A DNA stretch of 64,000 nucleotides, taken from positions 32,024,430 through 32,088,429 of the forward strand of contig NC_090399.1 of the NCBI RefSeq assembly GCF_036365525.1, given 5' to 3'. Source of the DNA: Heterodontus francisci (Eukaryota). The notes beneath the pieces are model-generated. The model saw only the letters and a list, made by a program, of their open reading frames with translations, searched no databases and was not told where the DNA came from. Shown one piece after another: positions 5,356 through 64,000 of this stretch (within the stretch, counting starts at the first letter, position 1; each line of letters starts with the position of its first letter). The position numbers and the translations under genes are program-made.

Positions 5356-5482
5356 CAGGACGGAGGCATTTCTTCCGGGGTGGATGTGGCGGGATTGTTT
5401 CAATGGGATGAAAAGCTGCCTTGGAAATCTCACCTTGTGCTTCTCCGTCTCTCTTTTCCCCTCCCCCCACCCCCCGGGGCAG

Positions 5483-9340: not shown

Positions 9341-9494
9341 ACTAAGTAGACGGTCTTGGTGATACCACGGATATGTGGCCAGTAGTTCATCTTGAAATCA
9401 GATAGGTCGCTGAGGTTGTGGAGTGGAAACTTGAGATCCCGAGGGGGGAGATAATGGACGATTCTTTATATTTCATTGTCTAACCATTACCCAC

Positions 9495-12814: not shown

Positions 12815-13515
12815 TGTAGCAAATGTGATAGCCAATTTGTGCACAGCAAGCTCCCACATACACCTTTGTGATAATGGCCAGATTATCAGTTTTATTCAGG
12901 TTGGTTAAAGGATAAATATTGACCCCAGGAAAACAAGGAGAACTCTCCCCATTCATCTTCCAGGATTGGCACTGGGGTCTTTTACATCCACCTGAGAGGA
13001 CAAATTGATCCTCAGTTTAACGGCTCATTCAAAAGATGATACCTCAGTACTGCCCCTCCAACAGTGCAGCACTCCCTCGGTACTGACCCTCCGACAGTGC
13101 AGCACTCCCTCAGCACTGCCCCTCCGACAGTGCAGCACTCCCTCGGCACTGCCCCTCCGACAGTGCAGCAATCCCTCGGCACTGCCCCTCCGACAGTGAG
13201 GCACTCCCTCGGTACTGCCCCTCCGACAGTGCGGCACTCCCTCGGTACTGCCCCTCCGACAGTGCAGCACTCCCTCGGCACTGCCCCTCCGACAGTGCAG
13301 CACTCCCTCGGCACTGCCCCTCCGACAGTGAGGCACTCCCTCGGTACTGCCCCTCCGACAGTGCGGCACTCCCTCGGTACTGCCCCTCCGACCGTGCAGC
13401 ACTCCCTCGGTACTGACCCTCCAACCGTGCAGCATTCCCTCAGTACTGACCCTCGATAGTGCAGCACTCCCCCTGCACTGACTCTCTAACAGTGCAACAC
13501 TCCATCAGTACTGTC
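12815..13515 (-). repeat. Deu-SINE remnant plus a 33-bp minisatellite (about 13045-13515)
   Basis: Same architecture as 8340-9340; unit cagtgcagcactccctcggcactgcccctccga. Confidence 0.85.
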
Positions 13516-44281: not shown

Positions 44282-46037
44282 TGTTAGGCAAACAACCCAC
44301 AAGAGGGCAGGTTAAAGGAAGTATGGGAAGAATCCTGGATGAAAATCCCTGCCACCCAGTCAACCAACCCATAAAAGTGTGAAAAGTTAGACCCCACATC
44401 CTGCTATGTAAATGCAGACTCTAGAAGCACCCCACCAGAGTTGCTAACAGCATTTACAGGAATCTGCAGAGACGAAGAGAGACCTCCAGGGGGCCGGGAA
44501 ACTGTGAGGGTGATGCCTCACCGAGTCGAAGTGTCACAGCAGAATGCAGTTAAGTCTGCACCAAACCTGCAGGTAGGAGTTTCCCAGGGAAGAAAGGGGA
44601 GAGTAACAAAGACTTCTCCCCCACAGTCAGAGGAAAAGGGAAACATCCATTTCCTGAAGCCAAAGGATAAAGGAACCACCCATCCACTGACGTCAAAAGT
44701 CTTTGTAAAGCAGCCCTGGCACCCAGAACAGACCATTGTTGATAAGCTTAAGACTGGTGAAGGAATAAAAATGAATGAGAGAAATGTCTGGTCTTCTTTC
44801 TGTATCTTCTATTTCTCTCAAACTCTAATGAAATGCAATTTTTTTTTTCAAATCACATTTCATTCCCCTGGGTGTGGAGGTGTCAGGCAAACACCCTACC
44901 TGCCAAGACTGAGGCACACATTATTTCACCACATGAACATTAAAACTTAAAATTGCAAGCCCTGGCTGGAAGGACATTGACATACTACCAGCCAATGTTG
45001 AAAGTGGCACAGTGGTTAGCACCGCAGCCTCACAGCTCCAGCAACCCGGGTTCAATTCTGGGTACTGCCTGTGTGGAGTTTGCAAGTTCTCCCTGTGCCT
45101 GCGTGGGTTTCCTCCGGGTGCTCTGGTTTCCTCCCACATGCAAAAGACTTGCAGGTTGATAGGTAAATTGGCCATTATAAATTGCCCCTAGTATAGGTAG
45201 GTGGTAGGGTGATATAGGGACAGGTGGGGATGTGGTAGGAATATGGAATGAGTGTAGGATTAGTATAAATGGGTGGTTGATGGTCGGCACAGACTCGGTG
45301 GGCTGAAGGGCCTGTTTCAGTGCTGTATCTCTAAATAACAAATAAATAAAATGGGGCCCCAGCAGTTGCCTCCCCAATAAACAGAAGTGGTCAAACCAGT
45401 TTTAGCCACATGACTGGCTGGCTGGAGTTTTTGAATTTGAACTTCCAACAAAGGATTGGAACAGACAAAGCCTTGTGCTCATGGAGTAAAAATCTCTCCT
45501 AGAACTGCAGCAAGAATTACAGCCTCTCCTGTCTGCCTGCTCATCTCTCAAGGAACTGAAATCACTGAAGACACAAAAGCTCAGAGAGAGAAATGGTTTC
45601 CTACACGAACAAGGTTTTAAGAAGACTACTGGGCCCCAATGAAATTCAAGACCATATAGTCTATCAAGGACTACAGTGAGCCCAAGAAACAGTAACAAGA
45701 TATTGCCTCAAACTATCATACTTACCTTTTCCTCTGCCTTTTTCTGTCCCTATCTGCATATTTATCTCACATGTGCATGCTAACGGTGGGCGCATCGTGT
45801 ATCCACGGCATGAACTGTATTAGAGTAAGTTAAGGTTCAACATATTTCATATTTTTGCTTTAAACCAAAGTAAGCCTGTTTGTGCTCATTTCTTTGTTTT
45901 ATAATTGGAAACTGTGAACAAGGATTCATAAAAAGGGGAGCTGAAAACATAGTGTGTTTAAAATTAAACCCTGTTACACTCAGACCTGGTAGAGACAGCA
46001 CAAGACCCCTAGACACATAGCTCACCTGGTTGTAACA
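44282..46037 (+). mobile_element. 3' fragment and LTR (44881-46037) of a Gmr1-like element, with a nested SINE (about 45003-45350)
   Basis: Homologous to about 23850-25498; LTR tgtca...tgtaaca. Confidence 0.8.
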
Positions 46038-46072
46038 ATGCCCTGATGTCTCTCTCTCTCTCTATGTTTCAG

Positions 46073-46327
46073 GCTCTCCCTCTCTCCGGTATTTCCTCAC
46101 CTCTATGGCTCCGATTCCCAGAGTGTGTGGCTGTTGGTTATGTGGACAATGGACAGTTTGGTGTGCACGACAGCGCTCGGAAGGAGCTGATTCCCGGGGG
46201 AGCGTTGGATGGTGGAGAGCGAGGGGCCTGAGACCTGGGCTGCGGAAGACGGAGCTCTCACGGAGGCAGGAGCTGCATTCTAAAACCCATCTTCCGATGC
46301 TCATGTCCCGGTCCAACTGGTCAAGCG
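46073..46327 (+). pseudogene. MHC class I-like alpha1 exon with internal frameshifts
   Basis: tttcag|GC...AGC G|gtgagt; (G)SPSLRYFLTSMAPIP / PECVAVGYVDNGQFGVHDSARKELIP / ERWMVESEGPETW / LRKTELSRRQELHSKTHLPMLMSRSNWSS (N86-type sequon). Confidence 0.88.
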
Positions 46328-46670
46328 GTGAGTCCTCATCCTCCCACCTCGCTTGGCCTCTTTCTTTGGGCTGAGGGATCCGCGAGAGAATGAGGAGACG
46401 CCTGGAGTGGAATGGAATCCGGGAGCCAAGGTTCCCAAGAATAGTAGCTTAGTCTCCCAGAGCAGAGGCTGCAGCCAATAGCGAGGGACCTTACATCGGT
46501 CCTTGAAGGATTAATCCAAAGCCTTGGAAGTGGAGGGTCTTTTAAATCTCGAGTTCGGTTCCCGGGCTTCTTTAAATACCCTCAGCTCCCCAGGTGATGA
46601 GTGACATGTTGTGTGGGCGGGGTTTCCCAATGGTACAGTGTCTGATTGGCTGTGTGTGTCTGATTGACAG

Positions 46671-46939
46671 GGATCCACACGTACCAGATGCTGATCGGCT
46701 GTGACTTGCGGGACGATGGGACCAGGACTGGGTTTGTCCAGAGGGGATGGGACGGACGAGACTTCATGAGCTTTGACAGGGATCACAAGGTGTGGGTGAC
46801 ACCGGTTCCATGGGCGGAGAGCATCCAAAACAGGTGGAACCAGGATAAAGTTGACAACCTGCGGTGTGAACATTACTTGGAGGAGAAATGTATTGAGTGG
46901 CTGAGTACCTGCAGTACGGAGAGCGAGAACTGACAGTCG
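46671..46939 (+). pseudogene. MHC class I-like alpha2 exon with a 4-nt deletion near its end
   Basis: gacag|GG...GTC G|gtgagt; GIHTYQMLIGCDLRDDGTRTGFVQRGWDGRDFMSFDRDHKVWVTPVPWAESIQNRWNQDKVDNLRCEHYLEEKCIEWL / YLQYGERELTV; both disulfide cysteines present. Confidence 0.93.
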
Positions 46940-47082
46940 GTGAGTTTGGGGGGGGGGTGGGGGAACAGAGTCGGCTGGCGCGGGGCGGGTGGCAGGACTG
47001 TGATTCACCGAGTACGGGGCGGAGCGGGGCTGCGAGCCGCTGTGCGTGGGGTGGGAAGTGGGACTGTTACTCGGTGAGAGCG

Positions 47083-50000
47083 GGGTTGGGAGCGTGTGGG
47101 GTGAGGAGCGGGAGCCCGATTGGAGCGAACGGGGTGAGGAGCGGGAGTTGGAGCGTGCGGGGTGAGGAGTGGGAGTTGGAACGAGCAGGGTGAGCCCGAT
47201 TGGAGCGAGCGGGGTGAGGAGCGGGAGTTGGAGCGGGCGGTGTGAGGAGCGGGAGTTGGAGCGAGCGGGGTGAGAAGCGGGAGCCCGATTGGAGCGTGCG
47301 GGGTGAGGAGCGGGAGTTGGAGCGTGCGGGGTGAGGAGCGAGAGTTGGAGCGTGCGGGGTGAGGAGCGGGAGTTGGAGCGTGCGGGGTGAGGAGCGAGAG
47401 TTGGAGCGTGCGGGGTGAGGAGCGGGAGTTGGAGCGTGCGGGGTGAGAAGCGGGAGTTGGAGCGTGCGGGGTGAAAAGCGGGAGTTGGAGCGAGCGGGGT
47501 GAGGAGCGGGAGCCCGATTGGAGCGTGCGGGGTGAGATGCGGGAGTTGGAGCGAGCGGGGTGAGAAGCGGGAGTTGGAGCAAGCGGGGTGAGGAGCGGGA
47601 GTTGGAGCGTGCGAGGTGAGGAGTGGGAGTTGGAACGAGCAGGGTGAGCCCGATTGGAGTGAGCGGGGTGAGGAGCGGGAGTTGGAGCGGGCGGGGTGAG
47701 GAGCGGGAGTTGGAGCGGGCGGTGTGAGATGCGGGAGTTGGAGCGAGCGGGGTGAGAAGCGGGAGCCCGATTGGGGCGTGCGGGGTGAGGTGCGGGAGTT
47801 GGAGCGTGCGGGGTGAGGAGCGAGAGTTGGAGCGTGCGGGGTGAGGAGCGAGAGTTGGAGCGTGCGGGGTGAGGAGCGAGAGTTGGAGCGTGCGGGGTGA
47901 GGAGCGGGAGTTGGAGCGTGCGGGGTGAGGAGCGAGAGTTGGAGCGTGCAGGGTGAGGAGCGGGAGTTGGAGCGTGCGGGGTGAGGAGCGAGAGTTGGAG
48001 CGTGCGGGGTGAGGAGCGGGAGTTGGAGCGTGCGGGGTGAGAAGCGGGAGTTGGAGCGTGCGGGGTGAGAAGCGGGAGTTGGAGCGTGCGGGGTGAGAAG
48101 CGGGAGTTGGAGCGAGCGGGGTGAGGAGCGGGAGCCCGATTGGAGCGTGCGGGGTGAGGAGTGGGAGTTGGAGCGTGCGGGGTGAGGAGCGAGAGTTGGA
48201 GCGTGCGGGGTGAGAAGCGGGAGTTGGAGCGAGCGGGGTGAGGAGCGGGAGCCCGATTGGAGCGTGCGGGGTGAGTTGCGGCAGCCCGATTGGAGCGTGC
48301 AGGGTGAGGAGCGGGAGTTGGAGCGTGCGGGGTGAGGAGCGAGAGTTGGAGCGTGCAGGGTGAGGAGCGGGAGTTGGAGCGTGCGGGGTGAGGAGCGAGA
48401 TTTGGAGCGTGCGGGGTGAGAAGCGGGAGTTGGAGCGTGCGGGGTGAGAAGCGGGAGTTGGAGCGTGCGGGGTGAGAAGCGGGAGTTGGAGCGAGCGGGG
48501 TGAGGAGCGGGAGCCCGATTGGAGCGTGCGGGGTGAGGAGCGGGAGTTGGAGCGTGCGGGGTGAGGAGCGAGAGTTGGAGCGTGCGGGGTGAGGACGAGA
48601 GTTGGAGCGTGCGGTGTGAGGAGCGGGAGTTGGAGCGTGCGGGGTGAGAAGCGGGAGTTGGAGCGAGCGGGGTGAGGAGCGGGAGCCCGATTGGAGCGTG
48701 CGGGGTGAGATGCGGCAGCCCGATTGGAGCGTGCAGGGTGAGGAGCGGGAGTTGGAGCGTGCGGGGTGAGGAGCGGGAGTTGGAGCGAGCGGGGTGAGAA
48801 GCGGGAGTTGGAGCGTGCGGGGTGAGGAGCGGGAGTTGGAGCGTGCGGGGTGAGAAGCGGGAGTTGGAGCGAGCGGGGTGAGGAGCCGGAGCCCGATTGG
48901 AGCGTGCGGGGTGAGATGCGGGAGCCCGATTGGAGCGTGCGGGGTGAGGAGCGGGAGCCCGATTGGAGCGTGCGGGGTGAGATGCGGGAGCTGGAGCGAG
49001 CGGGGTGAGAAGCGGGAGTTGGAACGAGCAGGGTGAGGAGCGGGAGCCCGATTGGAGCGAGCGGGGTGAGGAGCGGAAGTTGGAGCGGGCGGGGTGAGGA
49101 GCGGGAGTTGGAGCGGGCGGGGTGAGGAGCGGGAGTTGGAGCGGGCGGGGTGAGGAGCGGGAGTTGGAGCGAGCGGGGTGAGAAGCGGGAGCCCGATTGG
49201 AGCGTGCGTGGTGAGATGCGGGAGTTGGAGCGAGCGGGGTGAGATGCGGGAGTTGGAGCGAGCGGGGTGAGATGCGGGAGTTGGAGCGTGCGGGGTGAGA
49301 TGCGGGAGTTGGAGCGAGCGGGGTGAGATGCGGGAGTTGGAGCGAGCGGGGTGAGATGCGCGAGTTGGAGCGAGCGGGGTGAGATGCGGGAGTTGGAGCG
49401 AGCGGGGTGAGATGCGGGAGTTGGAGCGTGCGGGGTGAGGAGCAGGAGTTGGAGCGTGCGGGGTGAGGAGCGGGAGTTGGAGCGAGCGGGGTGAGGAGCG
49501 GGATTTGGAGCGAGTGGGGTGAGGAGCGGGAGCCCTATTGGAGCGTGCGGGTTGAGATTCGGGAGTTGGAGCGAGCGGGGTGAGGAGCGGGAGCCCAATT
49601 GGAGCGCGCGGGGTGAGATGCGGGAGTTGGAGCGAGCGGGGTGAGGAGCGGGAGCCCTATTGGAGCGTGCGGGGTGAGATGCGGGAGTTGGAGTTGGAGC
49701 GTGCGGGGTGAGGAGCGGGAGTTGGAGCGAGCGGGGTGAGGAGCGGGAGCCCGATTGGAGCGTGCGGGGTGAGATACGGGAGTTGGAGTTGGAGCGTGCG
49801 GGGTGAGGAGTGGGAGTTGGAGCATGCGGGTTGAGGAGCGGGAGCGGGAGTTGGAGCGAGCGGGGTGAGGAGCGGGAGTTGGAGCTTGCTGGGAGAGGAG
49901 CGGGAGTTGGAGCGTGCAGGGTGAGGAGCGGAAGTTGGAGCGTGCGGGGTGAGGAGCGGAAGCGGGAGTTGGAGCGTGAGGGGTGTGGAGCGGGAGCGGG

Positions 50001-53000
50001 AGTTGGAGCATGCGGGGTGAGGAGCTGGAGTTGGAGCGTGCGGGGTGAGGAGCGGGAGTTGGAGCGTGAGGGGTGCGGAGCGGGAGTTGGAGCGTGCGGG
50101 GTGAGATGCGGGAGTTGGATGGTGCGGGGTGCGGTGAGGTGAGGGACCGCGAACGGAGCGTTCGGGGTGAGAGCGGGACCGCGAGTCAGAGCGTGAGTCG
50201 GAGCGTGCTGGACAGTGTTCGGACCATGTGGGGTGAGTAGCGGGAGCGCAAGTCAGAGGGTGCGGGGTGCAGAGCGGGAGCACGAGTCGGAGCATGCGAT
50301 GAGTGGTGTCGGAGTGCGAGTCGGAGCATGCACTGTACGGAGCAGGAGCACGAGTGGGAGCGTGCAGAGCGGGAGCGGGAGTCGGAGCGTGTCGGGTGCT
50401 AAGCGGGAGCACGAGTCGGAGTGTGCGGAGGGCGGTGCGGGAGCGCGAGTCGGAGCGTGCGGGGTGCGGTGCGGGAGCGCGAGTCGGAGCATGCGGGGTG
50501 CTGAGCGGGAGCGAGTGTCAGAGCGTGCAGAGCGGGAGCGTGAGTCGGAGCAAGCGGGGTGCGGGGTGCAGAGCGGGAGCGCGAGTCGGAGCGTGTGGGG
50601 CGCGAGTGGGAGATCGAGTCAGAGCGTACGGGGTGCGGAGCGGGAGCGCGTGTTGGAGCGTGTGGGGTGCGGAGCGGGAGCGCGAGTCGGAGCGTACGGG
50701 GTGCGGAGCTGGAGCGCGTGTTGGAGCGAGTGCTGTGCGGAGCGGGAGCGCGAGTCGGAGCGTACGGGGTGCGGAGCGGGAGCGCGAGTCGGAGCGTACG
50801 GGGGCGGAGCAGGAGCGCAAGTCGGAGCGTGCGGAGCGGGAGCGTGAGTCGGAGCGTGCAGGGTGCGGAGCGGGAGCGCGAGTCGGAGCGTGCGCTGTGC
50901 AGAGTGGGTCTGCGTGACGGAGAGTGCGGGTTGCGGAGCGGGACAGGGATGTGAACGAGCGGAGTGGGAACACGATCGGAGCGTTCGGGGTGCGGTGCGG
51001 GACTGCGAGTCGGAGGGTGTGGGGTGCGCTGAGGGACCGCGAACGGTGCGTTCGGGGTGAGAGTGGGACCGCGAGTCGGAGCATGCCGGACCGTGATCGG
51101 ACCATGTGGGGTGCGGAGCGAGAGCGCGAGTCGGAGCGTACGGGGTGCGGAGCTGGAGCGCGTGTCGGAGCGAGTGCTGTGCGGAGCGGGAGCGCGAGTC
51201 GGTGCGTACGGGGTGCGGAGCGGGAGCGCGAGTCGGAGCGCACGGGGGGCGGAGCGGGAGCGCAAGTCGGAGCGTGCGGAGCGGGAGCGTGAGTCGGAGC
51301 ATGCAGGGTGCGGAGCGGGAGCGCGAGTCGGAGCGTGCGCTGTGCGGAGTGGGTCTGCGTGACGGAGAGTGCGAGTTGCGGAGCGGGACAGGGATGTGAA
51401 CGTGCGGAGTGGGAACACGATCGGAGCGTTCGGGGTGCGGTGCGGGACTGCGAGTCGGAGGGTGTGGGGTGCGCTGAGGGACCGCGAACGGAGCGTTCGG
51501 GGTGAGAGTGGGACCGCGAGTCGGAGCATGCCGGACCGTGATCGGACCATGTGGGGTGCGGAGCGAGAGCGCGAGTCGGAGCGTGCGCTGTGCGGAGTGG
51601 GTCTGCGTGACGGAGAGTGCGGGTTGCGGAGCGGTTCCGCGAGTCGGAGTGAGCGGGGTGCGGAACAGGTCCGCAGGTTGGAGTGAGCGGGGTGTGGAGC
51701 GGGACTGCGATTCGGAGTTAGTGGGGTGCGGAGTGGGTCCGCGAGTCGGAGTAAGCGGGGAGTGGAGCGAGTCCGTGAGTCGGAGTGGAGGGGTGCGGAG
51801 TGTGTCGGAGTGTGCGGGGTGAGGAGCGGGTCCGCGAGTCGGAGTGAGCGGGGTGCGGAGCGTGTCGGAATGAGCGGTGTGCGGTGCGGGAATGCGAGTC
51901 GGAGTGTGCGGGGTGAGGAGTGGGTCCGCGAGTCGGAGTGAGTGGGATGCGGAGCGTGTCGGAGTGTGCGGGGTGAGGTGCGGGTCCGCGAGTCGGAGTG
52001 TGCGGGGTGAGGAGCGGGTCCGCGAGTCGGAGTGAGCGGGGAGTGGAGCGAGTCCGTGAGTCGGAGTGGTGGGGTGAGGAGCGGGTCCGCGAGTCGGAGT
52101 GAGTGGTTTGAGGAGCGGGTCCGCGAGTCGGAGTGAGCGGGGTGCAGAGCGTGTCGGAGTGAGCGGGGTGCAGAGCGTGTCGGAGTGAGCGGGGTGAGGA
52201 GCGGGTCGGAGTGAGCGGGGTGAGGAGTGGGTCGGTGTGAGCGGGGTGAGGAGCGGGTCCGCGAGTCAGAGTGAGCGGGGTGCGAGCGAGTGGGAGTGAG
52301 CGGGGTGAGGAGCGGGTCCGCGAGTGGGTGTGAGCGGGGTGAGGAGCGGGTCCGCGACTGGGAGTGAGCGCGGCGAGGAGCGGGTCCGCGAGTCGGAGTA
52401 AGCGGGGAGTGGAGCGAGACCGCGAGTGGGAGTGAGCGGGGTGCGGTGCGGGACCACGATGCAGACTGAGCGGGGTGCCGAGCGGGACCGCGAGTGGGAG
52501 TGGGAGTGAGCGGGGTGCGGAGCGAGTGGGAGTGAGCGGGGTGCGGAGAGGGAATGCGAGTCGGAGTGAGCGGGGGGCGGTGCGGAGCATGTCGGTGTGA
52601 GCGGGGTGAGGAGCGGGTCCGCGAGCCGGAGTAAGCGGGGAGTGGAGCGAGACCGCGAGTCGGAGTGAGCGGGGTGCGGTGCGGGACCACGATGCAGAGT
52701 GAGCGGGGTGCGGTGCGGGACCGCGAGTGGGAGTGGGAGTGAGCGGGGTGCGGAGCGAGTGGGAGTGAGCGGGGTGCGGAGAGGGAATGCGAGTCGGAGT
52801 GAGCGGGGAGTGGAGCAAGACCGCGAGTCGGAGTGAGCGGGGTGCGGTGCGGGACCACGATGCAGAGTGAGCGGGGTGCGGTGCGGGACCGCGAGTGGGA
52901 GTGGGAGTGAGCGGGGTGAGGAGCGGGTCCGCGAGTCGGAGTGAGTGGGGTGCGGAGCGTGTCGGAGTGAGCGGGGAGCGTTGCGGGTCCGCGAGTGGGA

Positions 53001-53871
53001 GTGGGAGTGAGCGGGGTGCGGTGTGGGACCGCGAGTGGGAATGGGAATGTGCGGGGTGCGGTGCGGGACCGCGAGTGGGAGTGGGAATATGCGGTGGGCG
53101 GTGCGGGACCGCGAGTGGGAGTGAGCGGGGTGCGGTGTGGGTCCTCGAAAGGAGTGAAGGGTGCGGTGCGGGTCCGCGAGTCGGAGTAAGCGGGGAGTGG
53201 AGCGAGACCGCGAGTCGGAGTGAGCTGGGTGCGGTTCGGGACCACGATTCAGAGTGAGCGGGGTGCGGAGCGGGACCGCGAGTGGGAGTGGGAGTGAGCG
53301 GGGTGAGGAGCGGGTCCGCGAGTCGGAGTGAGCGGGCTGCGGTGCGTGTCGGAGTGAGCGGGGTGAGGAGCGGGTCCGCGAGTCGGAGTGAGCGGGGTGC
53401 GGGGCGGGAATGCGAGTCGGAGTGAGCGGGGTGCAGAGCGTGTCGGAGTGAGCAGGGTGAGGAGCGGGTCCGCGAGTCGGAGTGAGTGGGGTGCGGAGCG
53501 TGTCGGAGTGAGCGGGGTGCGTTGCGGGTCCGCGAGTGGGAGTGGGAGTGAGCGGGGTGCGGTGTGGGACCGCGAGTGGGCGTGGGAATGTGCGGAGTGC
53601 GGTGCGGGACCGCGAGTGGGAGTGGGAATATGCGGTGGGCGGTGCGGGACCGCGAGTGGGAGTGAGCGGGGTGCGGTGTGGGTCCTCGAAAGGAGTGAAG
53701 GGTGCGGTGCGGGTCCGCGAGTCGGAGTAAGCGGGGAGTGGAGCGAGACCGCGAGTCGGAGTGAGCTGGGTGCGGTTCGGGTCCGCGAGGTGGAACGAGC
53801 GGGGTGCGGAGCGGGACCGTGAATCGGAGTGAGCGGGGTGCGGAGTGGGACGGCGAGTGGGAGTGAGCGGT
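47083..53871. repeat. 6.8-kb G-rich, CpG-rich compound satellite
   Basis: 28-bp unit ggagcgtgcggggtgaggagcgggagtt (33-bp variants with cccga) to about 50110, then ~34-bp units built around gcgagtcggag. Confidence 0.97.
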
Positions 53872-54274
53872 GTGCTGGTAACCAAGATCCCTGTCTTGTC
53901 TTTAAGTAGAGTTGATGTGAGCTCACCTGATTTCTCTGACTTCATCATAAACTTTTAAAAACCTATCTTTACTCCGTTTGTACAGAGTAAAAGGATTAAA
54001 AAGATATAGCCCCTCAGTCAAAAACCTTTACTGCTCTCAGTAAGTGTCTGCTTATAAGTGCTCAAGTAAGTCCCCAATTAACACCCTCCACTGAACATAA
54101 TTAAAAAATTCACACACAATTAACAAATTAATATCCCGGGATATTCCAGTGCAACAGGACCCGCTGTATCCTGGGATGTTATACTACTACAAGGATGCGG
54201 TGTATCCTAGGATATCTCTGATTCTCTCACTCTCTCTCTCTCTGATTCTCTCCCCCTCTCTCTCTCTCCGACAG

Positions 54275-54383: not shown

Positions 54384-54719
54384 GTAGGAATTGGAGAGAA
54401 TTGGAGGAATTGTTAGAGCTGGTCTAGTGATCTCCCCCTCCATTTTAAACAAGTTGAACACTGAAGTAAAACCACTTAACATGCTGTGTATATACAGTGA
54501 TCATAGGGGGAAAAAATGACTGTTCTCAAACTCAAAAGATTCTTCAGTAAAAACATACAATACCCGGAATAAAAAGGGTCAACGTGAACATTAAGAACTA
54601 AGGTTTTAACTTATTTGTATCATAGTTCCTACTATTTTCACTGTGTCTAATGGCAGCTGAGAATAACACCCAAGTGCAGAAAAATACTATCATCTACAGT
54701 TGGTTTTCATCTATTCCTG

Positions 54720-56810
54720 ACACCAAGACCTCAAATCATTTCTTGGAACACATAGTAAGCAGTAAAGGTATTATGGCAGGCTCACAGAAGACACAAGCCA
54801 TTACAAAATTCCCTACTGCTACTTCCATTCAGCAGCTCCAAAGGTTTATAGGAATGGTGAATCAGCTCCATTTAGCACAAGTAACAGAACTGTTAAGACA
54901 ACTTCTCAAAAAAGATCAAGCATGGTGTTGCAGTTCACATCAAGAACAAGCATTTAGGAAGATTAAAGAAATATTCATATCGCCGGACATCTTGGCACAC
55001 TACAACCCTACACTACTAACAATGATAGCTGCAGACACCTTCTCTACAGTGTTAGGGGCCATCCTTTTCCAGGAGCAACCTGATGGTTCTCGCAGACCAA
55101 TATACTACGCATCTAGAGCTTTGCCTGAGACAGAGACAAGGTATGTGGTAATTGAAAAAGAAGCACTTGCCGTCACATCGGCTTGTGAAAATTTTCTGAT
55201 TCTATTGTTGGATTGAGAGTCGTCATCGAGACAGACCATAAACCTTTGGTATCTTTGTTGGATGAAAAGGAGATTGCAAAAAGTCCTCCAAGAATCCAAA
55301 ATTTCATTTAAGATTGATGAGATGTACATATGAGGCTGTATATGTCCAGAGAAAGATGCAAACGTTCACTGATGCGCTATCAAGAGTGATGGTAGACCAT
55401 CCGACACAACAAGATGTGAATTTTGTTGGCAAGATAGAGTCATAGTCACAGTATACTGCACAAAACTGGGCAGCAAGTATACTGAAAATGCAAGAAATTC
55501 ATCACGCTCAAAAAAGCAATGAAGAATGTATTCATATAAGGCAGTATTTCACACAAGGGTGGCCTAGTGGGAAGACAATGAAAACTTTCTATGAATATAG
55601 AAAATACTTCACAATCATTGATGATTTGCTAGATTATAATTACAGACTAGTCATTCCCAATTCACTTAGATCGGATATCTTGGAACATCTACATCAAGAC
55701 CACACGGGAATAACAAAGTGCGGGGTAAGGGCACAATCATCATTGTGGTGGCCAGGAATATCTAAAGACATTGAAAATGTGATCCAGAATTGTCAGATCT
55801 GTGCAGTATAAAGACCAGAACAGCTTGAACCTCTGTTAGCTACTCAATTTCTGACCAGACCTTGGCAATGTCTATGTATAGATTTATTCATGTTCAATGG
55901 AAAATCCTATATAATCATCATTGATTACTTCTCAAGATGGATAGAAGTGAGAAGGTTATATTCAACAACAACAGAAGCATTTAGAAGAGTTCTACTAGAA
56001 ATCTTTACGACACATGGCATCCCTGATGACGTGCTGTCAGACAACAGACCACAGTCTGCAGATTAATATGTCACACAGTTTGTGACAAGAATGGGATTTC
56101 AATATCTTACAAGTTCACCACGTTATCTACAGTCGAATGAAGTGGAAAGAGGTGTAAAAACCATAAAGTCCTTATTGAAGGAGAATGAAGACCTTCCAAC
56201 CTCACTTCTCATTTATCAATCTACACCGTTGACGTATGAACTATCACCTGCAGAGTTACTGATGGGCAGGAAGTTAAGAACACAACTTCCTGTGTTGCCT
56301 AAAAAAATTGCTTCCAGGATCACATGTCTGGGACTATGACTGGGAAAGAGACTGGGAAAACTCTTATAGAAGGAAGAAACTCGAAATTACAACAAAAGAT
56401 TTCATGCCAGATATTTACTAAAACTAAATGAAGGCCAAAGAGTATGGATACTTGTCCTAGACAGGGAAGGTACTGTCATCCAGAGAGATGAAAACCACCA
56501 GAGATTGTATGTGGTCCACACAACAGAAGGGAACATATGTAGAAATAGGGGAAACATTATTCCTATTCCCCAGAAGCAACAGTCAATCATTCATTATGAA
56601 GACCCAGATGATGATGAAGAAACCCAAAGCAAACAGAATAATACAATCCTTAGTAAAAATGAACCAAGTCAGTGACCCAGACTTACAAAGAAGACTACTG
56701 ATCATCCCAGTCAGACTACAAGAAGATTGGGGACAGTGGTGGTGAAACCTCCTAACAGACTAAATCTGTGAAGTCAGAGACTTGGGGGGGGGGGGGGGGG
56801 GGGGCGGCGG
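54720..56810 (+). mobile_element. Ty3/Gypsy pol remnant (RT end, RNase H, integrase) with a poly-G polypurine tract
   Basis: LQRFIGMVN, RRPIYYASRAL, IEKEALAV, LHQDHTGITKC...WWPGI...CQIC, SPAELLMGRKLRT. Confidence 0.88.
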
Positions 56811-56859
56811 GAGAAAGGGTAGTAGGTAAAGTCAAGAATGTATATGTTGCTTTGGAAGT

Positions 56860-57790
56860 GATTCTGTTTTTTTGTTAAAATATTTTTTGAGGAATTTATA
56901 GTCAAACTGAATAAATGTTGGACCAGTCTTTTTCAAGAGGGCCTGAAAGAAATAGTTTGACAACAATGTTTACTGGTTGTCACATGAGTCAAGTTAAAAA
57001 TAGAAAAGAAACCCTGGTAACAGGGGAAAATGTGTGGAAAATGTGTGTCAGTAGTGCACCCCTTGATTGCACAAGCCCGGGAGCAGCAGACGACATCTGA
57101 GAGAGAAAGCGCACAGGCTTTTGGTTGTAGTGTCAGTGTGTTTTACCTTCTGGAGTGAACACCTGATAAAGTTAGCCTGCTGCTGAAGAAGTGAAGGAAG
57201 GAGAGAAGACCACAACCCAGCTCGTTTTCCAGCATCTCTAAAAGACCCTGAGAAGTCCATTGCGTCAATTCATCTTGTCTCCTGTCTTTGAGGCAAGCCT
57301 GCTAGGCTGGTTCTCAATGCCATCTAGAAAGAACTGTTCTAAAAGCTTTCAGTGACCCGTCTACATGTACGCGGAAGTTAGACTGTACATCAGTTTTGGA
57401 ACACAGTATATCTCATCTGCTGTTTTCTTCAGCCATGTGTTTTTTTTTTGTCTCGAACAGAGCTCTGAACCAACATCCATTTAGTTTTTCCGGTTAACCA
57501 GTGTATTTATGTATGTGTGTGTACGAGCGTGAGGGGCTAAGGTAAAAAGGGGACTTTAAAATTTAAATCTGAGTTTTGCTGCTTTTCTTCATTACAGTTA
57601 AGTCTTGCTTTATAATAAACTGATAATTCTGTTGTTCAATAAAGAAACCTGGTTAGTGTGCTCTATTCTGGAAAAATAGAGTATATTATTGACAGTACCA
57701 GTAAGTGGGAAAATTTAAATATATTTTGTGACTTGTGGAGAAGTGGGACTAGAATAAACACTGCACTCCTCCCGCCTCGGTTGTCATAAT
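56860..57790 (+). mobile_element. Probable solo or partial LTR
   Basis: 3' end ...gtgggactagaataaacactgcactcctcccgcc...gtcataa parallels the LTR end at about 37490-37580. Confidence 0.5.
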
Positions 57791-59640
57791 GTTAATAAAA
57801 TGTATGGATAAAGACTTGGGGACCGGGGCGGGAGTGGTGGTGGGAGATGTAGTGTATGGACATGAAAGGGTTAATGCAGGAGACAGTGAGAGCAGCCCCT
57901 TCCACTGTAGAGATAATGATGCAACAGTCACATGGTAATGGTTTTGGGAGCAGAGAGCAGCAGCATGAAGAATGCTCGCTGGAGAGGCTTGAGGAGGGTG
58001 TAAATAATAAGTTATTAATTGACCTTATCAAGCCTCCGAGACTTCATCAATAACGCCCAAGCTACGCTACAACTACAACAACAACACACAACATTTATTA
58101 CACCGCGAATAAAAAACACAATGAGCAGTGGGTAAGGGGGTGGATGAATCAGAAGTTAGAACAAGTAAGATCCCAAAAGGCCATGTGATCCAGCCCCTGG
58201 GTGTATGTCCCACAGCACCCCCATGGAGGAACGAGGGGAGCCCACAGTCTGGGCCCCCTGCCTGGCACTGCCCTAAAACCCAGACTCAATCAGCTCCAGG
58301 GTGTTGGAACTGTGGCCAAAAAGGCCATTTTTCCAGGCAATGTCCAAATGGGGGATCTAGCAGGCCTCATGGGAACGGCCCGATAGGAAGAGGGACCGAT
58401 GAGCTGAAACATTTGTGGAAAGAGGTTGAGGAATGAAAACAACTTATGAGGGAATCTGGGAAGGTGGGGCAGGTGTACGCCACAAAACACAGGCCAAGTG
58501 TGACCATTGGTGGCTACTCCGGTACAGGGGTCTGTGAGTGAGTTACATTCAGACCCCTACGGCTGGCCCCATGGAACCACATCAGTAGGGGGCATCTCCT
58601 GAATGTTGTTGGTCGATACCGGGGCAACCTACACATGTTTATGGAGAGAAATTCCACAGACATTTGATAATCTAGGAGTGATAGAATTAGAAGGCTTTGG
58701 GGGAGGAATTGACCGCAGTCAGTCAGTAGAAACCAGCCTGACCTTGATCATCCGTCACCCAGTACTTTGTACAAAGAGACACAGCGAGGAGTCAGATGGC
58801 AGATTAGGGCTGGATTGGCTCTGGAAACATGATATTGTGCTAGACATGATTAATCAATGTCTGTGCTGAGGGAATATGGACACAGGAGAGAAGGTAGTAG
58901 TTCGACTCGGAGGGAAAATTTCGTCTGTGGGAGTAAGGGTTGAATCTTGCCTTGACCAACTTCTCAGACACAATTTGCTGGAGGTTGAGGGGGTGGTCAA
59001 GCAGGCTGCATGTTGGGGCCAGACATAAAAATGAGTGGGGAGGGTGAACCAGGAAGTTGATATACAAGGCCCAGGCCCCATCAGGCCCACTAGACAGTAC
59101 TGGTTTCCGAAGGAACCAGAGGAACCATGTTCTGTCTCCCCAGTTGACCCAGTCAAAGTCAGAAGAAAATTGTTATTACCAGTTCACCTGCACAATGTTA
59201 TAGAAATACAGTTGGAGATGCCCCTTCAGGAGGAAGCCCTAAGGTCAGTGTCCACTTTGCTCACCCGATTCCCTTGCCCTTCACTTAGTTTGAAGTCAAT
59301 CCTTCAATGTACAACTACCTCACAAGAACATTTGGTTTGTATGCAGAAGGATAATAAAGATATCAAGAAAAGAATCAAAACCTTAGGAGACCACAAATGG
59401 TGGGAAATGGTATATGGGTCAATCTGTCTGGGCTCATTTGCTTTCTTATGTTTTCTTAGTTGTTCCAGTTGTGTTGACCATCACTTGTCATTATTGTTTG
59501 GATACGTATAGACAGCATGCATCAGCGGTTGGAGGATCAGCTGCAGGTCTGGCAAGACCTGTCCACTTATGGGGGCCTTTTGAACAGTCCCCATGAGTAT
59601 ACAAAGCTCACACACAATTAGTAGAGTCTGTAAAATTATT
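57790..59640 (+). mobile_element. Heavily deleted retrovirus-like remnant (gag knuckle, protease, RT start, possible env tail)
   Basis: CWNCGQKGHFSRQC; LLVDTGATYT; PTRQYWFPKE; HKWWEMVYG followed by a hydrophobic stretch. Confidence 0.6.
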
Positions 59641-59794
59641 AGTAGATAATTTGGTGCTGTGTAATTTGTACATTTGTAGTTTGAAGGTGATCAGGCTGAG
59701 AGTTGTACACAAAATATACGAACCAGAATTGAAAACTAAGTTGCATGAGGAGGATCGTTAGAATTTGCCTGAGTCCCAAAGTTAATCTGATTAT

Positions 59795-60255
59795 CAGAAT
59801 TTGGAATAAAAACAAGAAATGCTGGAACCACTCAGCAGGTCTGGCAGCATCTGTGAAAAGAGAAGCAGAGTTAACGTTTCGGGTCAGTGACCCTTCATCG
59901 GAACTGACAAATATTAGAAAAGTCACAGGTTATAAGCAAGTGAGGTGGGGGTGGAGCAAGAGATAACAAAGGAGAAGGTGTAGATTGGACAAGGCCACAT
60001 AGCTGACCAAAAGGTCATGGAGCAAAGGCAAACAATATGTTAATGGTGTGTTGAAAGACAAAGCATTAGTACAGATTAGGTGTTAATGAAATAAAAACAA
60101 GAAATGCTGGAATCACTCAGCAGGTCTGTCACTGACCCGAAACATTAACTCTGCTTCTCTTTTCACAGATGCTGCCAGACCTGCTGAGTGATTCCAGCAT
60201 TTCTTGTTTTTATTTCAGATTTCCAGCATCCGCAGTATTTTGCTTTTATTTTAGG
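59795..60255. mobile_element. Penelope-like termini, including a nested foldback copy (about 60090-60250)
   Basis: Same terminal sequence in both orientations; direct repeat taggtgttaatgaa on both sides of the nested copy; hammerhead-like motif at 59869-59905 (-). Confidence 0.75.
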
Positions 60256-60968
60256 TGTTAATGAATTTGGATTTGGGTTAACAGAGATTAGTCAGAACAA
60301 TGTAAGTAGCAACTATTGCAGACATATTGGCTACATCCCATGTCAAGGTGCGAGTATCGAATATTAGCCAGAACAATGGAAGCACCCAAGCAATATCACT
60401 TAACTATTTGGGATTGTCTAGGTCATCCTGGTCCTTTTGTAAAATTAACTGCTCAACAGTTAAGCCATTAAGACAGAAATTATTCAAGTCTGAAGTTTGA
60501 GTGAGTAGGAACTCACTTCAATATACATTCTGAGCATCATGTGATAGAACTCACAGAGAAAGGATAAGGAAATATTGTGAGACAGCCCTTTCTTGGAGGG
60601 AGAACACACAGGATAACTGGAGGGACATCATCTACAAGATTTATCACCTTGCATTTGCAAGAAACAGGTTGTATGAATCTATTGTATAACCGTAATTGTT
60701 ATTAGTGTTGATGGTGTTATTAGTATTGGTATCTGAGTAACAAACTTGCATTTGGACAACACACTCGAGCTAGAAGTATGAGGAATCATTTAATTGTGTT
60801 TTAAAGAATTTCCTAACACGGTATAGCAGGCTCAAGGGACTGACTGAATAGCCTCCTCCTATTCCAGTGTTTACTCTGATTGGTCAGACATGGTGTGGGG
60901 CAGTGAATCTCTCTCTCTGGTTAACCCTGTCCTTGTCCTGTGTCTCCTCCCCACTCTCCCCTCCCCAG

Positions 60969-61130
60969 GAACAGCTGAAGACTCTTGCCAGTGAGATGGT
61001 GAAGGACTCCCCAGAGTTTCACTGCCTGCAGTCCCAGTTCTCCATGCTTTACAATGAGAGCCTGCAGCTCAAGGCCCAGATGGACGATGGCCGCAATCTG
61101 CTCTTCACCACCCAAACCACAGTCGAGTGA
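60969..61130 (+). pseudogene. Orphan internal RNF20/RNF40 exon (partial gene duplicate)
   Basis: ctccccag|GAA; [53 protein letters not shown] resembles RNF20 [35 protein letters not shown]. Confidence 0.85.
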
Positions 61131-61234
61131 AGGACATCACTGAAACAACATGAGATCGAGAGATGGGACTGATGGTGTTTGAAAGAACAACCTCATTGCT
61201 GGGAGAATACAGCTTCAAATTTTCATTTATTATT

Positions 61235-61420
61235 TCATTAATTAATGTGATCAGAAATGTCCAGTCTTTGGAATTTTCCAAGTTAATCCTAAAATAAATA
61301 TATTCTATCACAACACGGACTGAACTTGATGTCGTAATCTGTTTGTTCAATTAAAAAAAAACAGTTTGAACAATGTGGCAACCTCAATATCCCCGGGGAG
61401 ATCCCACAGGGTATAAATTA
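61235..61420 (+). promoter_or_regulatory. Proximal promoter of the GPR139-like gene: homeodomain sites, O/E (EBF) palindrome, TATA box
   Basis: TCATTAATTAATG 61235-61247; CAATTA 61348-61353; TCCCCGGGGA 61390-61399; TATAAA 61412-61417. Confidence 0.6.
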
Positions 61421-61503
61421 CAGGCTCTGGCAATGTGTCACCTCAGAGTTTAATACAGAGAGATTGTCTGCAGCACGAAGGGACACATCACTTCACGCAG
61501 AAA

Positions 61504-61570
61504 ATGTATCTTCCAATTGACAGTATCTTGAAAATATATTACCCAATCCTGGCTGTCATTGGTGTTCCTG
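61504..61570 (+). CDS. First coding exon of a GPR139/GPR142-like rhodopsin-class GPCR; remainder beyond the window
   Basis: aaaATG; MYLPIDSILKIYYPILAVIGVP(x)|gtaagt; YY.IL..IGVP is the TM1 start of this family, with a phase-1 intron before the TM1 Asn. Confidence 0.75.
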
Positions 61571-62249
61571 GTAAGTGACTATAACCATTGAAGTTGTGTA
61601 AATCTGTGTGTGAGCTGGTCTCTGGTTTTACTCTGTGACTGATAATGTTAAATGCTGATCTAGTGGTCACTGTTATACAGACACCTGATCAGTGATATCA
61701 TTTCCTTACGTCAAATATCCTGAATTATCTCTGCAATTTTATCCCATTGTCTCAGCTGATAATAAACCTCTGTTTGTAACTGACAGGGTCTCTGAATTAT
61801 CAAGTTATTGCATTTAGTGGAATGTGGTGTAATGCTGAATTAGATCTGAGTGAAGGCAACTCTCTGAGTGAAGGTATTAGTGGGAGCATCAGTCAGTGTA
61901 AAATCAAACTGAGTGTGAGTCACTAACTGGAGTGGAACACCTGATCCCAGTGACCATGTATTACTGGGAGTATCTGTCACTGTGGAATTGTACTGAGTAA
62001 AATTGTACAACCCGGTTCTATTTTGAAATCATTGTTTCAGGTATCTGATCTCTCCATTCCATGAAGCTGCCTCTGTGTTTTAACAATGTAATTGATTGCA
62101 AAGTGGTTTTGGCTGATGTTTGATAATAAGTGTATAAAGTGAAATGTATTGATATTGCTCTGTCTCCTATTGAACTGCTCCAACAGAAACAGATGTGTTA
62201 CTGACAGTTAAACAGGACAGCACTGTTAAAGCATTCTAATCCTCTGTAT

Positions 62250-63535
62250 AATCACAGAATTACAGAATCACAGAACTGTTACAGTGCAGAAGGAGGCCAT
62301 TTGGCCCATCGTTTCTGCACAGGCTCTCCGAAAGAGCAATTCACATTTTGCCATTCCACCACCTTTTTCCCGTAACCCTGCACATTCTTCCTTTTCATAA
62401 ATCAGTCCAATTCCCTTTTGAATGCTTCAATTGAACCTGCCTCCACCTCACTCTGAGGCAGCACATTCCAGACCATAACCACTCGCTGTGTAAAAAAGGT
62501 TTTCCTCATGTCGCTTTTGCTTCTCTTACCAAATACTTTAAATCTGTGCCCTCTCGTTCTCGATCCTTTCATGAGTGGAACAGTTTCTCTCTGTCTACTC
62601 TGTCCTGATCCCTCATGATTTTGAATGCCTCTATTAAATCACCTCTCAGCCTTCCCTTCTCCAAGGAGAACAGTCCTAACTTCTCCAATCTATCTTCACA
62701 AGTGAAATTCCTCGTCCCTGGAACCATTCATGTGAATCTTTCCTGTACTCTCTCCAATGCCCTCACGTCTTTCCTAAAGTGTGGTGCCCAGAACTGGATG
62801 AAATACTCCAGCTGAGGCCGCACTAGTGTCTTATACAAGTTCAACACAACCTCTTTATTCTTGTCCTTTTTGCTCCTATTAATAAAGCCCAGGATACTAT
62901 ATGCTTCGTTAACTGCTGTCTCGACCTCTCCTGTCACATTCAATGACTTATGCACATATACACAAAGGTCCCTCTGCTCCTGAACCCCCTTTAGAATTGT
63001 ACCCTTTATTTTATATTGTCTCTCCATGTTCTTCCTACCAAAATGAATCACTTCACATTTCTCTGCATTGAATTTCATCTGCCACCTGTCTGCCCATTCC
63101 ACCAACTTGTCTGTGTCCTTTTGGAGTTCTACACTATCCTCCACACAGTTGACACTGCTTCCAAGTTTCATATCATCTGCAAACTTTGAAATTGTGCCCT
63201 GTACATCAAGGTCTGGATCATTAATATATCTCAAGAAAAGCAAGGGTCCCAACACTGATACCCGGGGAACTCCACTACAAACCTTCCTCCAGTCCAAAAA
63301 ACATCCACTAACCACGTCTCTTTGTTTTCTGCCACTCAGCCAATTCCATGTCCATGTTGCTGCCATCCCTTTTATTTCATGAGCTATAAATTTGCTCACA
63401 AGTCTGCAGAGAATGCAGAGAACTGTGAAGTGATTCATTTTGGTAGGAAGAACACAGAGAGACAATATAGAATAAACGTTACAATTCTAAAGGGGGTGCA
63501 GGAGCAGAGGGAGCTGGGTGTAAATGTGCATAATC
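62250..63535 (-). mobile_element. CR1 LINE RT 3' fragment with a short inverted piece (about 63410-63535)
   Basis: SGVPRVSVLGPLLF...ISKFADDMKL...WQMKFNAEKCEVIHFG...LVRPQLEY. Confidence 0.9.
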
Positions 63536-64000
63536 AGGTTTCTTACTCTGAGTATCGTTACTGTAAACACATAAGTTATTTTCGTGATAATTAATCACCT
63601 TCCCCACATGGTCCTGAGAATCTGTGGGTCATGAGTGGTGAATTTTATAATCTGTCTATTACACAGGATGAATATTGGGCTGTGTTTATTGAATCATCCA
63701 CTTCTGTAACTGATTGTGGTTTGACGGGATCAGTTCCTATATATGATTCAGAGTCTTGACACATGTAACCTGTACCGATCTCTGCCCTTAGCTCAGTGAG
63801 GAGTGTCCCTGTGAGGAGAGACACCTGTAACTGAGGAACAGACATTGGGTTTTCATAATACAGAGATCAGATCGAGGGCAGTAAATAATAACATTAGTAA
63901 ACTATTAATGATGAAATAAATAGTACACTTCTCTCAGTTCAGGTATAATTGTGGTTAAAATAATTGCACCTTCTCCAGTGCATCAATATCCTTTTTGTAA

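What the first reader, a model, noticed from the sequence alone, without database searches (positions are those of the whole stretch)
61235..61576. GPR139-like GPCR with an olfactory-receptor-style promoter: candidate non-canonical shark chemoreceptor
Seen: a 67-nt coding exon missed by the ORF track (MYLPIDSILKIYYPILAVIGVP|gtaagt). Within about 270 bp upstream lie TAATGA/TAATTG homeodomain sites, the palindrome TCCCCGGGGA (11/12 match to the O/E consensus YTCCCYRGGGAR) and a TATA box. Established: homeodomain (Lhx2/Emx2) plus O/E (EBF) sites are the hallmark of vertebrate odorant receptor promoters; mammalian GPR139/GPR142 sense aromatic amino acids; cartilaginous fish have very few classical ORs. 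From memory, unverified: shark annotations list many two-exon 'probable GPR139' genes. Inference: this belongs to an expanded family that may act as amino-acid chemoreceptors in olfactory neurons. EBF-driven expression in B cells or other neurons is an alternative.
Basis: partly seen in the sequence, partly recalled or inferred. Interest (0 to 1): 0.8.

Follow-up and report, generated by a model that had tools for sequence, protein, structure and literature searches.

The report
First exon of shark GPR139-like receptor
This is most likely the start (core promoter plus short first exon) of one copy of a much-duplicated shark orphan-receptor gene, and nothing tested here shows that it is switched on like a smell receptor.

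Summary
There is a 67-nt ATG-to-GTAAGT open frame (61504-61570, phase 1), TATAAA at 61412, the palindrome TCCCCGGGGA at 61390-61399, and TAAT-type sites at 61235 and 61348.

The exon looks real. A cloudy catshark protein model carries a homologous stretch running from the TATA box to the same splice point and departs from our sequence exactly there. Horn shark read contigs show the stretch is multi-copy.

Its GPCR identity could not be tested. The GPCR reading rests on earlier unchecked scan notes and on resemblance recalled from memory.

The olfactory-promoter reading is not supported:
- The motifs are individually common.
- The same bases also fit an NF-kB consensus.
- The TAAT sites lie in tracts that vary by insertions and deletions among copies.
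- In the catshark copy a TCR-beta V segment sits directly upstream of the TATA box.
- No spliced transcript was seen.

An orphan RNF20 exon travels upstream with the module. The scan found the same family and promoter motif before on other DNA (s1-873880), with a similar verdict. This is an ordinary new family member; the family itself remains an interesting open question.

The parts
60969..61127 (+). Orphan RNF20 (BRE1A)-like exon fragment. The AG acceptor at 60967-60968 is kept. The old donor is lost, so the frame runs into TGA at 61128-61130.
   Evidence: phmmer against PDB: human BRE1A residues 366-415, E 6.8e-13; BRE1B E 6.5e-11. Multi-copy in horn shark contigs (records 1, 2).
61235..61246 (.).
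   Evidence: Deletions of 4-8 bases here in many paralogue contigs (table 4).
61348..61362 (.).
   Evidence: Varies by insertions and deletions in the contigs of organism C (table 4).
61389..61400 (.). O/E (EBF)-like palindrome ATCCCCGGGGAG; core TCCCCGGGGA at 61390-61399.
   Evidence: In the rows shown for the DNA run, C>T at 61394 (a free N position of the core) in about 10% of laid depth, and A>T at 61399 in about 8% (table 3).
61396..61405 (+). GGGAGATCCC, a perfect match to the NF-kB consensus GGGRNWYYCC. It overlaps the O/E-like site.
   Evidence: 13 matches in the window, 17 expected by chance.
61412..61417 (+). TATA box, 92 nt before the ATG. It is the upstream limit of homology with the catshark copy.
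61440..61503 (+). Inferred 5' UTR. The start site is placed about 25-30 nt after the TATA box by rule of thumb and was not measured.
   Evidence: Inference. Conserved with P0002 when translated (DCLQHEGTHHF against DCMQYKGTHHF).
61504..61570 (+). First coding exon, 67 nt: MYLPIDSILKIYYPILAVIGVP plus G. This gives a very short N-terminal tail and the start of a hydrophobic helix (putative TM1).
   Evidence: Homology to P0002 residues 147-168. In the rows shown, paralogue variants change residues 2-4, while the one listed change in the helix part (61551) is silent (table 3).
61571..61576 (+). Splice donor GTAAGT, phase 1.
   Evidence: P0002 departs from the window's reading exactly here, and its next residue D (GAY) fits the shared G.
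61577..64000 (+). Intron of at least 2430 nt with no 7TM ORF. It holds a LINE reverse-transcriptase fragment on the minus strand (62731-63465).
   Evidence: Pfam RVT_1 E 3.2e-10.

Best explanation
Window 61412-61576 is the 5' module of one copy of a multi-copy shark gene family. It consists of a TATA box, a 5' UTR of about 60 nt, a 67-nt first coding exon and a phase-1 donor. The family is most likely the expanded orphan class A receptor family that shark annotations call 'probable GPR139'.

How it would work:
- Transcription would start about 25-30 nt after the TATA box (inferred).
- Exon 1 supplies a tail of about 10 residues and the first turns of transmembrane helix 1.
- The donor joins a large second exon that must lie beyond base 64000. 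That exon was not seen, so it is open whether this copy is intact.

Origin: the module is part of a segmentally duplicated unit. In this copy, and in at least some others, the unit also carries a hitch-hiking exon copied from the RNF20 gene, whose real 3' end is at the start of this window.

The O/E-like palindrome and the TAAT sites exist, but their function is unproven.
For: -: a search of 1.84 billion proteins gave one credible hit, P0002 (E 2.8e-4). A second hit, P0001, is a repetitive protein with no aligned stretch.
- 22 of 36 residues are identical (pairwise E 8e-14, tblastn E 8e-9). The match ends exactly at our donor, and KIYYxILAVIGVP is nearly invariant.
- homology continues upstream in another frame as far as the TATA box (score 31 against shuffles of 17 +/- 3).
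- P0002 comes from Scyliorhinus torazame, a different shark order from the horn shark named in the scan's notes (ordinal placement is from my own knowledge).
- many contigs from the same species are 80-95% alike over 60846-62250. In the rows shown, the changes in the N-terminal tail alter amino acids, while the one listed in the helix part is silent.
- (unchecked leads): this genome holds a very large GPR139-like family, with copies 125 and 152 kb further along this chromosome. Another copy has an RNF20-like exon about 290 bp before the GPCR start codon.
- the RNF20-like exon and the real RNF20 terminal exon are both confirmed in this window.
Against: - No 7TM sequence is in the window.
- The peptide matches nothing in PDB or Pfam.
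- No annotated protein of 244-775 aa scored against P0002's homologous stretch apart from P0002 itself; one other candidate shared words but did not reach E 10.
- The only homologue found is a chimeric TCR-beta-like model, not a GPCR.
- No spliced read or contig was seen.
- The resemblance of IYYPxLAxxGxP to the start of GPR139's first helix, and GPR139's two-exon structure, are from my memory only.
Confidence: 0.7

Rival explanations
1. The O/E site plus homeodomain sites plus TATA box form an odorant-receptor-type promoter, and the family serves as amino-acid chemoreceptors in olfactory neurons.
For: - The O/E core is rare (about 2% per 300 bp). It sits 13-22 nt before the TATA box.
- The core stays intact in most of the laid paralogue depth in the rows shown (table 3).
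- O/E and homeodomain sites, and TATA boxes in a subset, are enriched in mouse OR promoters (PMC3247239).
- GPR139 is reported to respond to L-Trp and L-Phe (PMC5103216).
Against: - The motifs were chosen after looking at the sequence, and the same bases fit an NF-kB consensus.
- The TAAT sites lie in tracts that vary by insertions and deletions (table 4).
- The paralogues laid are 80-95% alike throughout, introns included, so keeping the motif shows common descent, not selection.
- In the catshark copy the 30 nt before the TATA equivalent encode AWSLHSDLAV. That peptide has no Pro or Gly, so those bases cannot spell TCCCNNGGGA in any frame.
- Catshark nose studies find V2Rs. The 50 genes most specific to the brain-and-olfactory-epithelium library include no GPCR (PMC11979771, PMC10116579).
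- No expression data were obtained here.
Confidence: 0.08
2. A dead 5' fragment. The module was copied by segmental duplication without a working second exon, so this copy is a relic and not a gene.
For: - The surroundings are repeat-rich: LINE and LTR-element fragments and an orphan RNF20 exon.
- At least 2.4 kb of intron holds a LINE insertion and no exon 2.
- Earlier scan notes describe birth-and-death turnover with dead copies.
- At 61114 and 61551 this copy carries the minority letter among the copies laid (table 3).
Against: ATG, open frame, donor and TATA box are all intact. Introns of several kb are normal in this large genome.
Confidence: 0.25
3. Not a GPCR. The exon is a signal-peptide or leader exon, or another short hydrophobic first exon, of a different family linked to TCR or MHC regions.
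For: - A short hydrophobic exon with a phase-1 end is also the format of Ig, TCR and MHC leader exons (established knowledge).
- The only homologue found lies inside a TCR-beta-like model.
Against: - No V-type or alpha-1-type ORF follows on the + strand within 2.4 kb, whereas V leader introns are about 0.1-0.3 kb.
- In P0002 the stretch lies after the V domain, and that model has its own different leader.
- Near-invariance of KIYYxILAVIGVP across two shark orders suits a structural helix better than a signal peptide.
- Scan notes tie the RNF20-exon-plus-start-codon arrangement to a GPCR gene (unchecked).
Confidence: 0.1
4. An immune-type promoter. The overlapping NF-kB and EBF sites next to a TATA box drive expression in lymphocytes, fitting the family's position inside TCR, Ig and MHC-linked regions.
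For: - A perfect GGGRNWYYCC match lies 7-16 nt before the TATA box.
- EBF is also a B-cell factor (established knowledge).
- Family members lie among TCR V segments (as leads; P0002).
Against: The kB consensus is common by chance (13 found, 17 expected). Co-location of two duplicating families needs no shared function. No expression data were obtained.
Confidence: 0.07

Closest known systems
GPR139 / GPR142 orphan class A GPCRs, and the 'probable GPR139' expansions in fish and shark annotations
   Same: A very short N-terminus. A first coding exon that ends in phase 1 inside the first helix. A hydrophobic IYYP-L-A-G-P type start. The gene structure and helix motif of GPR139 are from memory and were not tested here.
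   Different: No 7TM part could be seen. The copy belongs to a multi-copy, fast-duplicating set, not to the single conserved brain receptor. No match to the solved GPR139 chains was detectable with 22 residues.
Mammalian odorant receptor promoters (O/E + homeodomain, TATA box in a subset; PMC3247239)
   Same: AT-rich, no CpG island, one O/E-like site close to a TATA box, TAAT sites within 270 bp.
   Different: The coding region is split by an intron, unlike typical OR genes. There is no evidence of olfactory expression, of conservation beyond common descent, or of enhancer-type composite sites. The cross-species copy shares nothing upstream of the TATA box.
Olfactory receptor genes interspersed in the mammalian TCR-alpha locus
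   Same: A duplicating receptor family sits among antigen-receptor V segments. The catshark homologue lies about 110 nt after a TRBV coding end.
   Different: In this window there is no V segment. An RNF20 exon copy occupies the upstream position instead.
Exon-carrying segmental duplications (gene-fragment hitch-hiking)
   Same: An RNF20 exon with its acceptor and flanking intron is copied 55 kb beyond the real gene's end. According to a scan note it is also found 10 Mb away before another GPCR start.
   Different: No transposon ends were identified around the unit, so the mechanism is unknown.

Membership tests
GPR139-like class A GPCR | Seven-transmembrane domain (Pfam 7tm_1) | not testable with these tools
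   No such ORF in the window.
GPR139-like class A GPCR | Detectable sequence similarity to GPR139/GPR142 | tested here: inconclusive
   The 22-aa peptide gave no PDB hit at E<=10 and no Pfam hit. No full-length relative was found. The peptide is too short for these tests.
GPR139-like class A GPCR | Two coding exons, with a phase-1 intron just after the start of TM1 | tested here: inconclusive
   A donor in phase 1 after ...AVIGVP is present, and the catshark model uses the same point. That GPR139 itself has this structure is from memory.
Odorant-receptor-type promoter | O/E (EBF) site near the transcription start | tested here: met
   TCCCCGGGGA at 61390-61399, an 11/12 match, 13-22 nt before the TATA box. 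One site; about 2% chance per 300 bp.
Odorant-receptor-type promoter | Homeodomain (Lhx2/Emx2-type) sites | tested here: inconclusive
   The sites are present. However, 12-19% of 300-bp windows hold two or more, and they lie in tracts that vary by insertions and deletions among copies (table 4).
Odorant-receptor-type promoter | Motifs conserved among paralogues or orthologues beyond neutral expectation | tested here: not met
   The laid paralogues are alike throughout, introns included, so no excess conservation can be shown. The catshark copy shares nothing upstream of the TATA box and cannot encode the O/E core there. This rests on one copy, read from protein only.
Odorant-receptor-type promoter | Expression in olfactory sensory neurons | not testable with these tools
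   The runs are coded and their tissue is unknown. Only contigs were available, none shown spliced.
Ig/TCR/MHC leader exon (rival) | A V-domain or alpha-1 exon shortly downstream | tested here: not met
   No such ORF on the + strand between 61571 and 64000.

The most novel reading that the evidence does not exclude
The shark-expanded GPR139-like receptors share a conserved TATA-to-exon-1 module with an EBF/NF-kB composite site. They are expressed one or a few per cell as a sensory or surveillance repertoire, either in olfactory neurons or in lymphocytes. That would be a sixth vertebrate chemoreceptor-like family, or an immune GPCR repertoire. It would help explain how sharks smell so well with so few classical receptors, or why these genes nest in TCR and MHC regions.
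Probability: 0.1. Interest if true: 0.8.

Novelty: new member of a known kind. Interest (0 to 1): 0.3.

Why it matters
Cartilaginous fish have very few classical odorant receptors, and their nose is thought to rely on a small V2R set (PMC10116579). A large, fast-duplicating orphan GPCR family would therefore be an obvious candidate for an unrecognised sensory or immune repertoire.

This locus alone cannot settle that question. It does give three things that can be used:
- The exact first exon and donor that automatic ORF tracks miss, which is needed to build full-length models.
- A TATA-to-donor module conserved across two shark orders, which can serve as a probe to collect all family promoters.
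- An RNF20-exon hitch-hiker that marks one duplication lineage.

Tried and rejected
- PDB search with the 22-aa peptide at E<=10: nothing.
- Pfam on the 47-aa ORF: nothing.
- Word-index protein search with the ORF: no candidate.
- Word-index search with P0002 residues 130-172, which allows GPCR-sized targets: only P0002 itself scored.
- Whole-library phmmer: one credible hit, P0002. The other hit, P0001, is a repetitive protein with no aligned stretch and was disregarded.
For P0002's 23-residue helix it returned only generic single-helix matches.
- Scan-notes look-ups by sequence: blank.
- Literature searches for a shark GPR139 expansion: nothing relevant.
- Self-BLAST and tblastn: no second copy of the module and no TCR V or C sequence in the window.
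- A recombination-signal reading of CACAGGG at 61405 was rejected. No nonamer follows at a 12- or 23-nt spacing (read directly).
- Rfam on 59500-64000: nothing above chance. Tandem repeats: none.
- Depth figures were not used to rank expression, as the tool warns against it.
Only exon 1 exists here, and it was searched on its own.

Full report
**1. The observation**

- The ATG is at 61504, with A at -3.
- The open frame runs 67 nt to 61570 and encodes MYLPIDSILKIYYPILAVIGVP plus one base (G).
- The donor is CTG|GTAAGT at 61570/61571, so the intron is in phase 1.
- An in-frame stop lies at 61414, inside the TATA box (TATAAA, 61412-61417).
- The palindrome TCCCCGGGGA is at 61390-61399. The 12-mer matches YTCCCYRGGGAR at 11 of 12 positions.

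**2. Is it more than chance?**

Taken singly, it is not.
- Open ATG-to-GTRAGT frames of at least 60 nt occur 16 times on this strand of the window.
- TATAAA occurs 54 times.
- Two or more TAAT-type sites occur in 12-19% of 300-bp windows.
- The O/E core is the rarest item: 4 in 64 kb against about 2 expected, or about 2% of 300-bp windows.
- All three motif classes together are found in 0.3-0.5% of windows, a small count that probably comes largely from windows overlapping this locus. The motif set was picked after reading the sequence.
- Bases 61396-61405 (GGGAGATCCC) overlap the palindrome and fit the NF-kB consensus GGGRNWYYCC perfectly. That consensus is itself common: 13 found, 17 expected.

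Motif reading alone therefore cannot name the regulator.

**3. Independent support for the exon**

- A phmmer search of 1.84 billion representative proteins with the 47-aa ORF that contains the exon gave two hits below E 0.001. P0001 is a repetitive protein with no aligned stretch and was disregarded. P0002 (E 2.8e-4) is a real match.
- P0002 is a 443-aa 'uncharacterized protein' of Scyliorhinus torazame. It has V-set and C1-set immunoglobulin domains. It is a chimeric TCR-beta-like gene model with a V domain ending in YYCAWS, a J-like FGEGTRLTVLE and a C region.
- Between V and J it carries DCMQYKGTHHFSFNMQHQIKLAMKIYYMILAVIGVP. This aligns with window 61462-61569 at 22 of 36 identities (pairwise E 8e-14; tblastn E 8e-9, the only significant hit in the window).
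- The two sequences part exactly after ...AVIGVP, which is our donor. P0002's next residue, D (GAY), fits a split codon that begins with our exon's last G.
- The start methionine aligns. The hydrophobic stretch KIYYxILAVIGVP is nearly invariant, while the first nine residues differ.
- Homology continues upstream in another reading frame (YKLQALAMCHL against YLLTALGMYHL, score 31 against 17 +/- 3 for shuffles). This reaches the TATA box and includes the ATG at 61433.
- A module running from the TATA box to the donor is therefore conserved between a horn shark (the species named in the scan's notes) and a catshark. These belong to different shark orders (from my own knowledge).

**4. The module is multi-copy**

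- Contigs of a DNA run of the same species, laid at 80% likeness or more, cover 60846-62250 many times at 80-95% identity (tables 1 and 8).
- Among the variant rows shown, the changes at codons 2-4 alter the amino acid (61507, 61511, 61513). The one listed change in the helix part (61551) is silent. This fits a coding exon with a free N-terminal tail and a constrained helix. Only 40 of 491 variant rows were shown.
- The copies are alike through the intron as well. Retention of the O/E core and TATA box in most of the laid depth therefore shows common descent, not selection. At 61394, C>T in about 10% of depth falls on a free position of the core. At 61399, A>T occurs in about 8%.
- The two TAAT tracts vary by insertions and deletions among copies (table 4: deletions of 4-8 bases at 61228-61241 and several at 61345-61362).

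**5. What lies upstream**

- Bases 60969-61127 are an orphan exon of RNF20. It aligns with human BRE1A residues 366-415 (E 6.8e-13). Its AG acceptor is intact, its donor is lost, and a stop follows at once.
- The real RNF20 gene ends in this same window: the terminal RING exon at about 5480-5656 matches BRE1A at E 2.5e-38.
- A first-stage note of this scan reports another orphan RNF20-like exon about 290 bp before a GPCR start codon 10.3 Mb away (unchecked).
- The DNA contigs confirm that the RNF20 piece is itself multi-copy and is joined to the downstream sequence (records 1-4).
- The duplicated unit therefore reaches at least 650 bp upstream of the ATG in this lineage.
- In the catshark copy the DNA just upstream of the TATA equivalent is the end of a TRBV coding region. 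YYCAWS ends 36 codons before the start methionine.
- The residues there (AWSLHSDLAV) contain no Pro or Gly. The bases that encode them therefore cannot spell TCCCNNGGGA in any frame. This is my own derivation.
- What the two sharks share begins at the TATA box and does not include the O/E or TAAT region. The caveat is that this is one copy, read only through its protein.

**6. Is it a GPR139-like receptor?**

This could not be tested here.
- The window holds no 7TM ORF, so exon 2 must lie beyond 64000.
- The peptide gives no PDB or Pfam match.
- The word-index search found nothing for the ORF.
- With P0002's stretch as the query and GPCR-sized targets allowed, the word-index search scored only P0002 itself.

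The GPCR reading rests on three things:
- Unchecked scan notes say this genome has a very large GPR139-like family. Members lie 125 and 152 kb further along this chromosome and inside TCR V arrays. P0002's position fits that.
- The RNF20-exon-plus-start-codon arrangement is noted elsewhere in the genome.
- My recollection is that GPR139-type receptors begin their first helix with a similar motif and have an intron at this point.

I rate it likely (about 0.7-0.8) but unproven.

The main alternative is a leader exon of an Ig-fold gene, which has the same short, hydrophobic, phase-1 format. It is disfavoured because no V or alpha-1 ORF follows within 2.4 kb, and because the helix part is nearly invariant across two shark orders.

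**7. Expression**

- No run is on record as RNA.
- In three runs guessed to be RNA, contigs lie over 61056-61281 and 61128-61271, which is the RNF20-like exon running on past its lost donor.
- Other contigs lie over 61242-61934, 61252-61610 and 61243-61748. These are colinear with the genome across the TATA box and across the donor (table 8).
- No joint at 61570 is among those listed, although only 15 of 255 joints were shown.
- The contigs are 88-96% alike, so they come from paralogues. They may be DNA or unspliced RNA.
- Nothing here shows a TATA-defined start, splicing or a tissue.
- Catshark studies describe V2Rs as the working nose receptors. They found no GPCR among the 50 genes most specific to the brain-and-olfactory-epithelium library (PMC10116579, PMC11979771). 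Neither study mentions this family, which is silence, not refutation.

**8. Comparison with known systems and verdict**

- O/E and homeodomain sites, and TATA boxes in a subset, are indeed enriched in mouse OR promoters (PMC3247239).
- This locus meets only the 'one O/E-like site' criterion.
- The same family and the same promoter idea were raised before by this scan on other DNA (s1-873880). Its follow-up concluded that the motif is present but not shown to be under selection, and that no expression data were available. My results agree.
- My results add the exact exon 1, the TATA-to-donor conservation across orders, the differing upstream DNA in the catshark copy, and the RNF20 hitch-hiker.
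- I file the locus as a new member of a known (annotated but uncharacterised) family. The chemoreceptor hypothesis remains open at about 10%.

**9. Limits and rules**

- The single calls of the look-up of sequencing runs and read laying were used.
- LTR-retroelement and LINE fragments were only described.

Noticed in passing
window 60969-61127 (+), with flanks about 60846-61290: An orphan copy of one RNF20 (BRE1A) exon: acceptor kept, donor lost. It lies 55 kb beyond the real RNF20 3' end. It is multi-copy in the genome and sits upstream of the receptor's first exon. Contigs from runs guessed to be RNA run from the exon about 150 nt past the lost donor (to 61271-61281).
   Followed up: partly
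window about 2900-3049 and 5480-5656 (+): The last exons of the genuine RNF20 (BRE1A) gene. The RING finger exon matches human BRE1A at E 2.5e-38, better than BRE1B.
   Followed up: partly
P0002 (Scyliorhinus torazame protein model): The gene model fuses a TRBV segment, read through its end (..YYCAWS LHSD.., where HSD would fit a CACAGTG heptamer), to the receptor-type first exon and then to TCR-beta J-C exons. This suggests the module's donor can capture read-through transcripts from unrearranged V segments in catshark. The DNA could not be fetched.
   Followed up: partly
window 60128-60254: A very highly repeated element of about 125 bp (SINE-like), with huge contig depth in all four runs and many inverted joints. 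No tRNA or Rfam match above chance was found in 59500-64000.
   Followed up: partly
window 62731-63465 (-) and 15603-16553 (+): LINE reverse-transcriptase fragments (Pfam RVT_1). The first lies inside the putative intron.
   Followed up: partly
window 54650-59500 (+): Pieces of an LTR-retroelement-like sequence: RT-RNase H (Pfam RT_RNaseH_2), a gag zinc knuckle and a protease-like DTG motif, broken by stops. Described only.
   Followed up: partly
window 46000-54000: A GC-rich (62-70%), strongly G-skewed block of long degenerate tandem repeats that gives very long spurious ORFs on both strands. I did not examine that claim.
   Followed up: no
window 900-2650, 8470-9390, 13010-13470: Several minisatellite arrays with open frames on both strands.
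   Followed up: no
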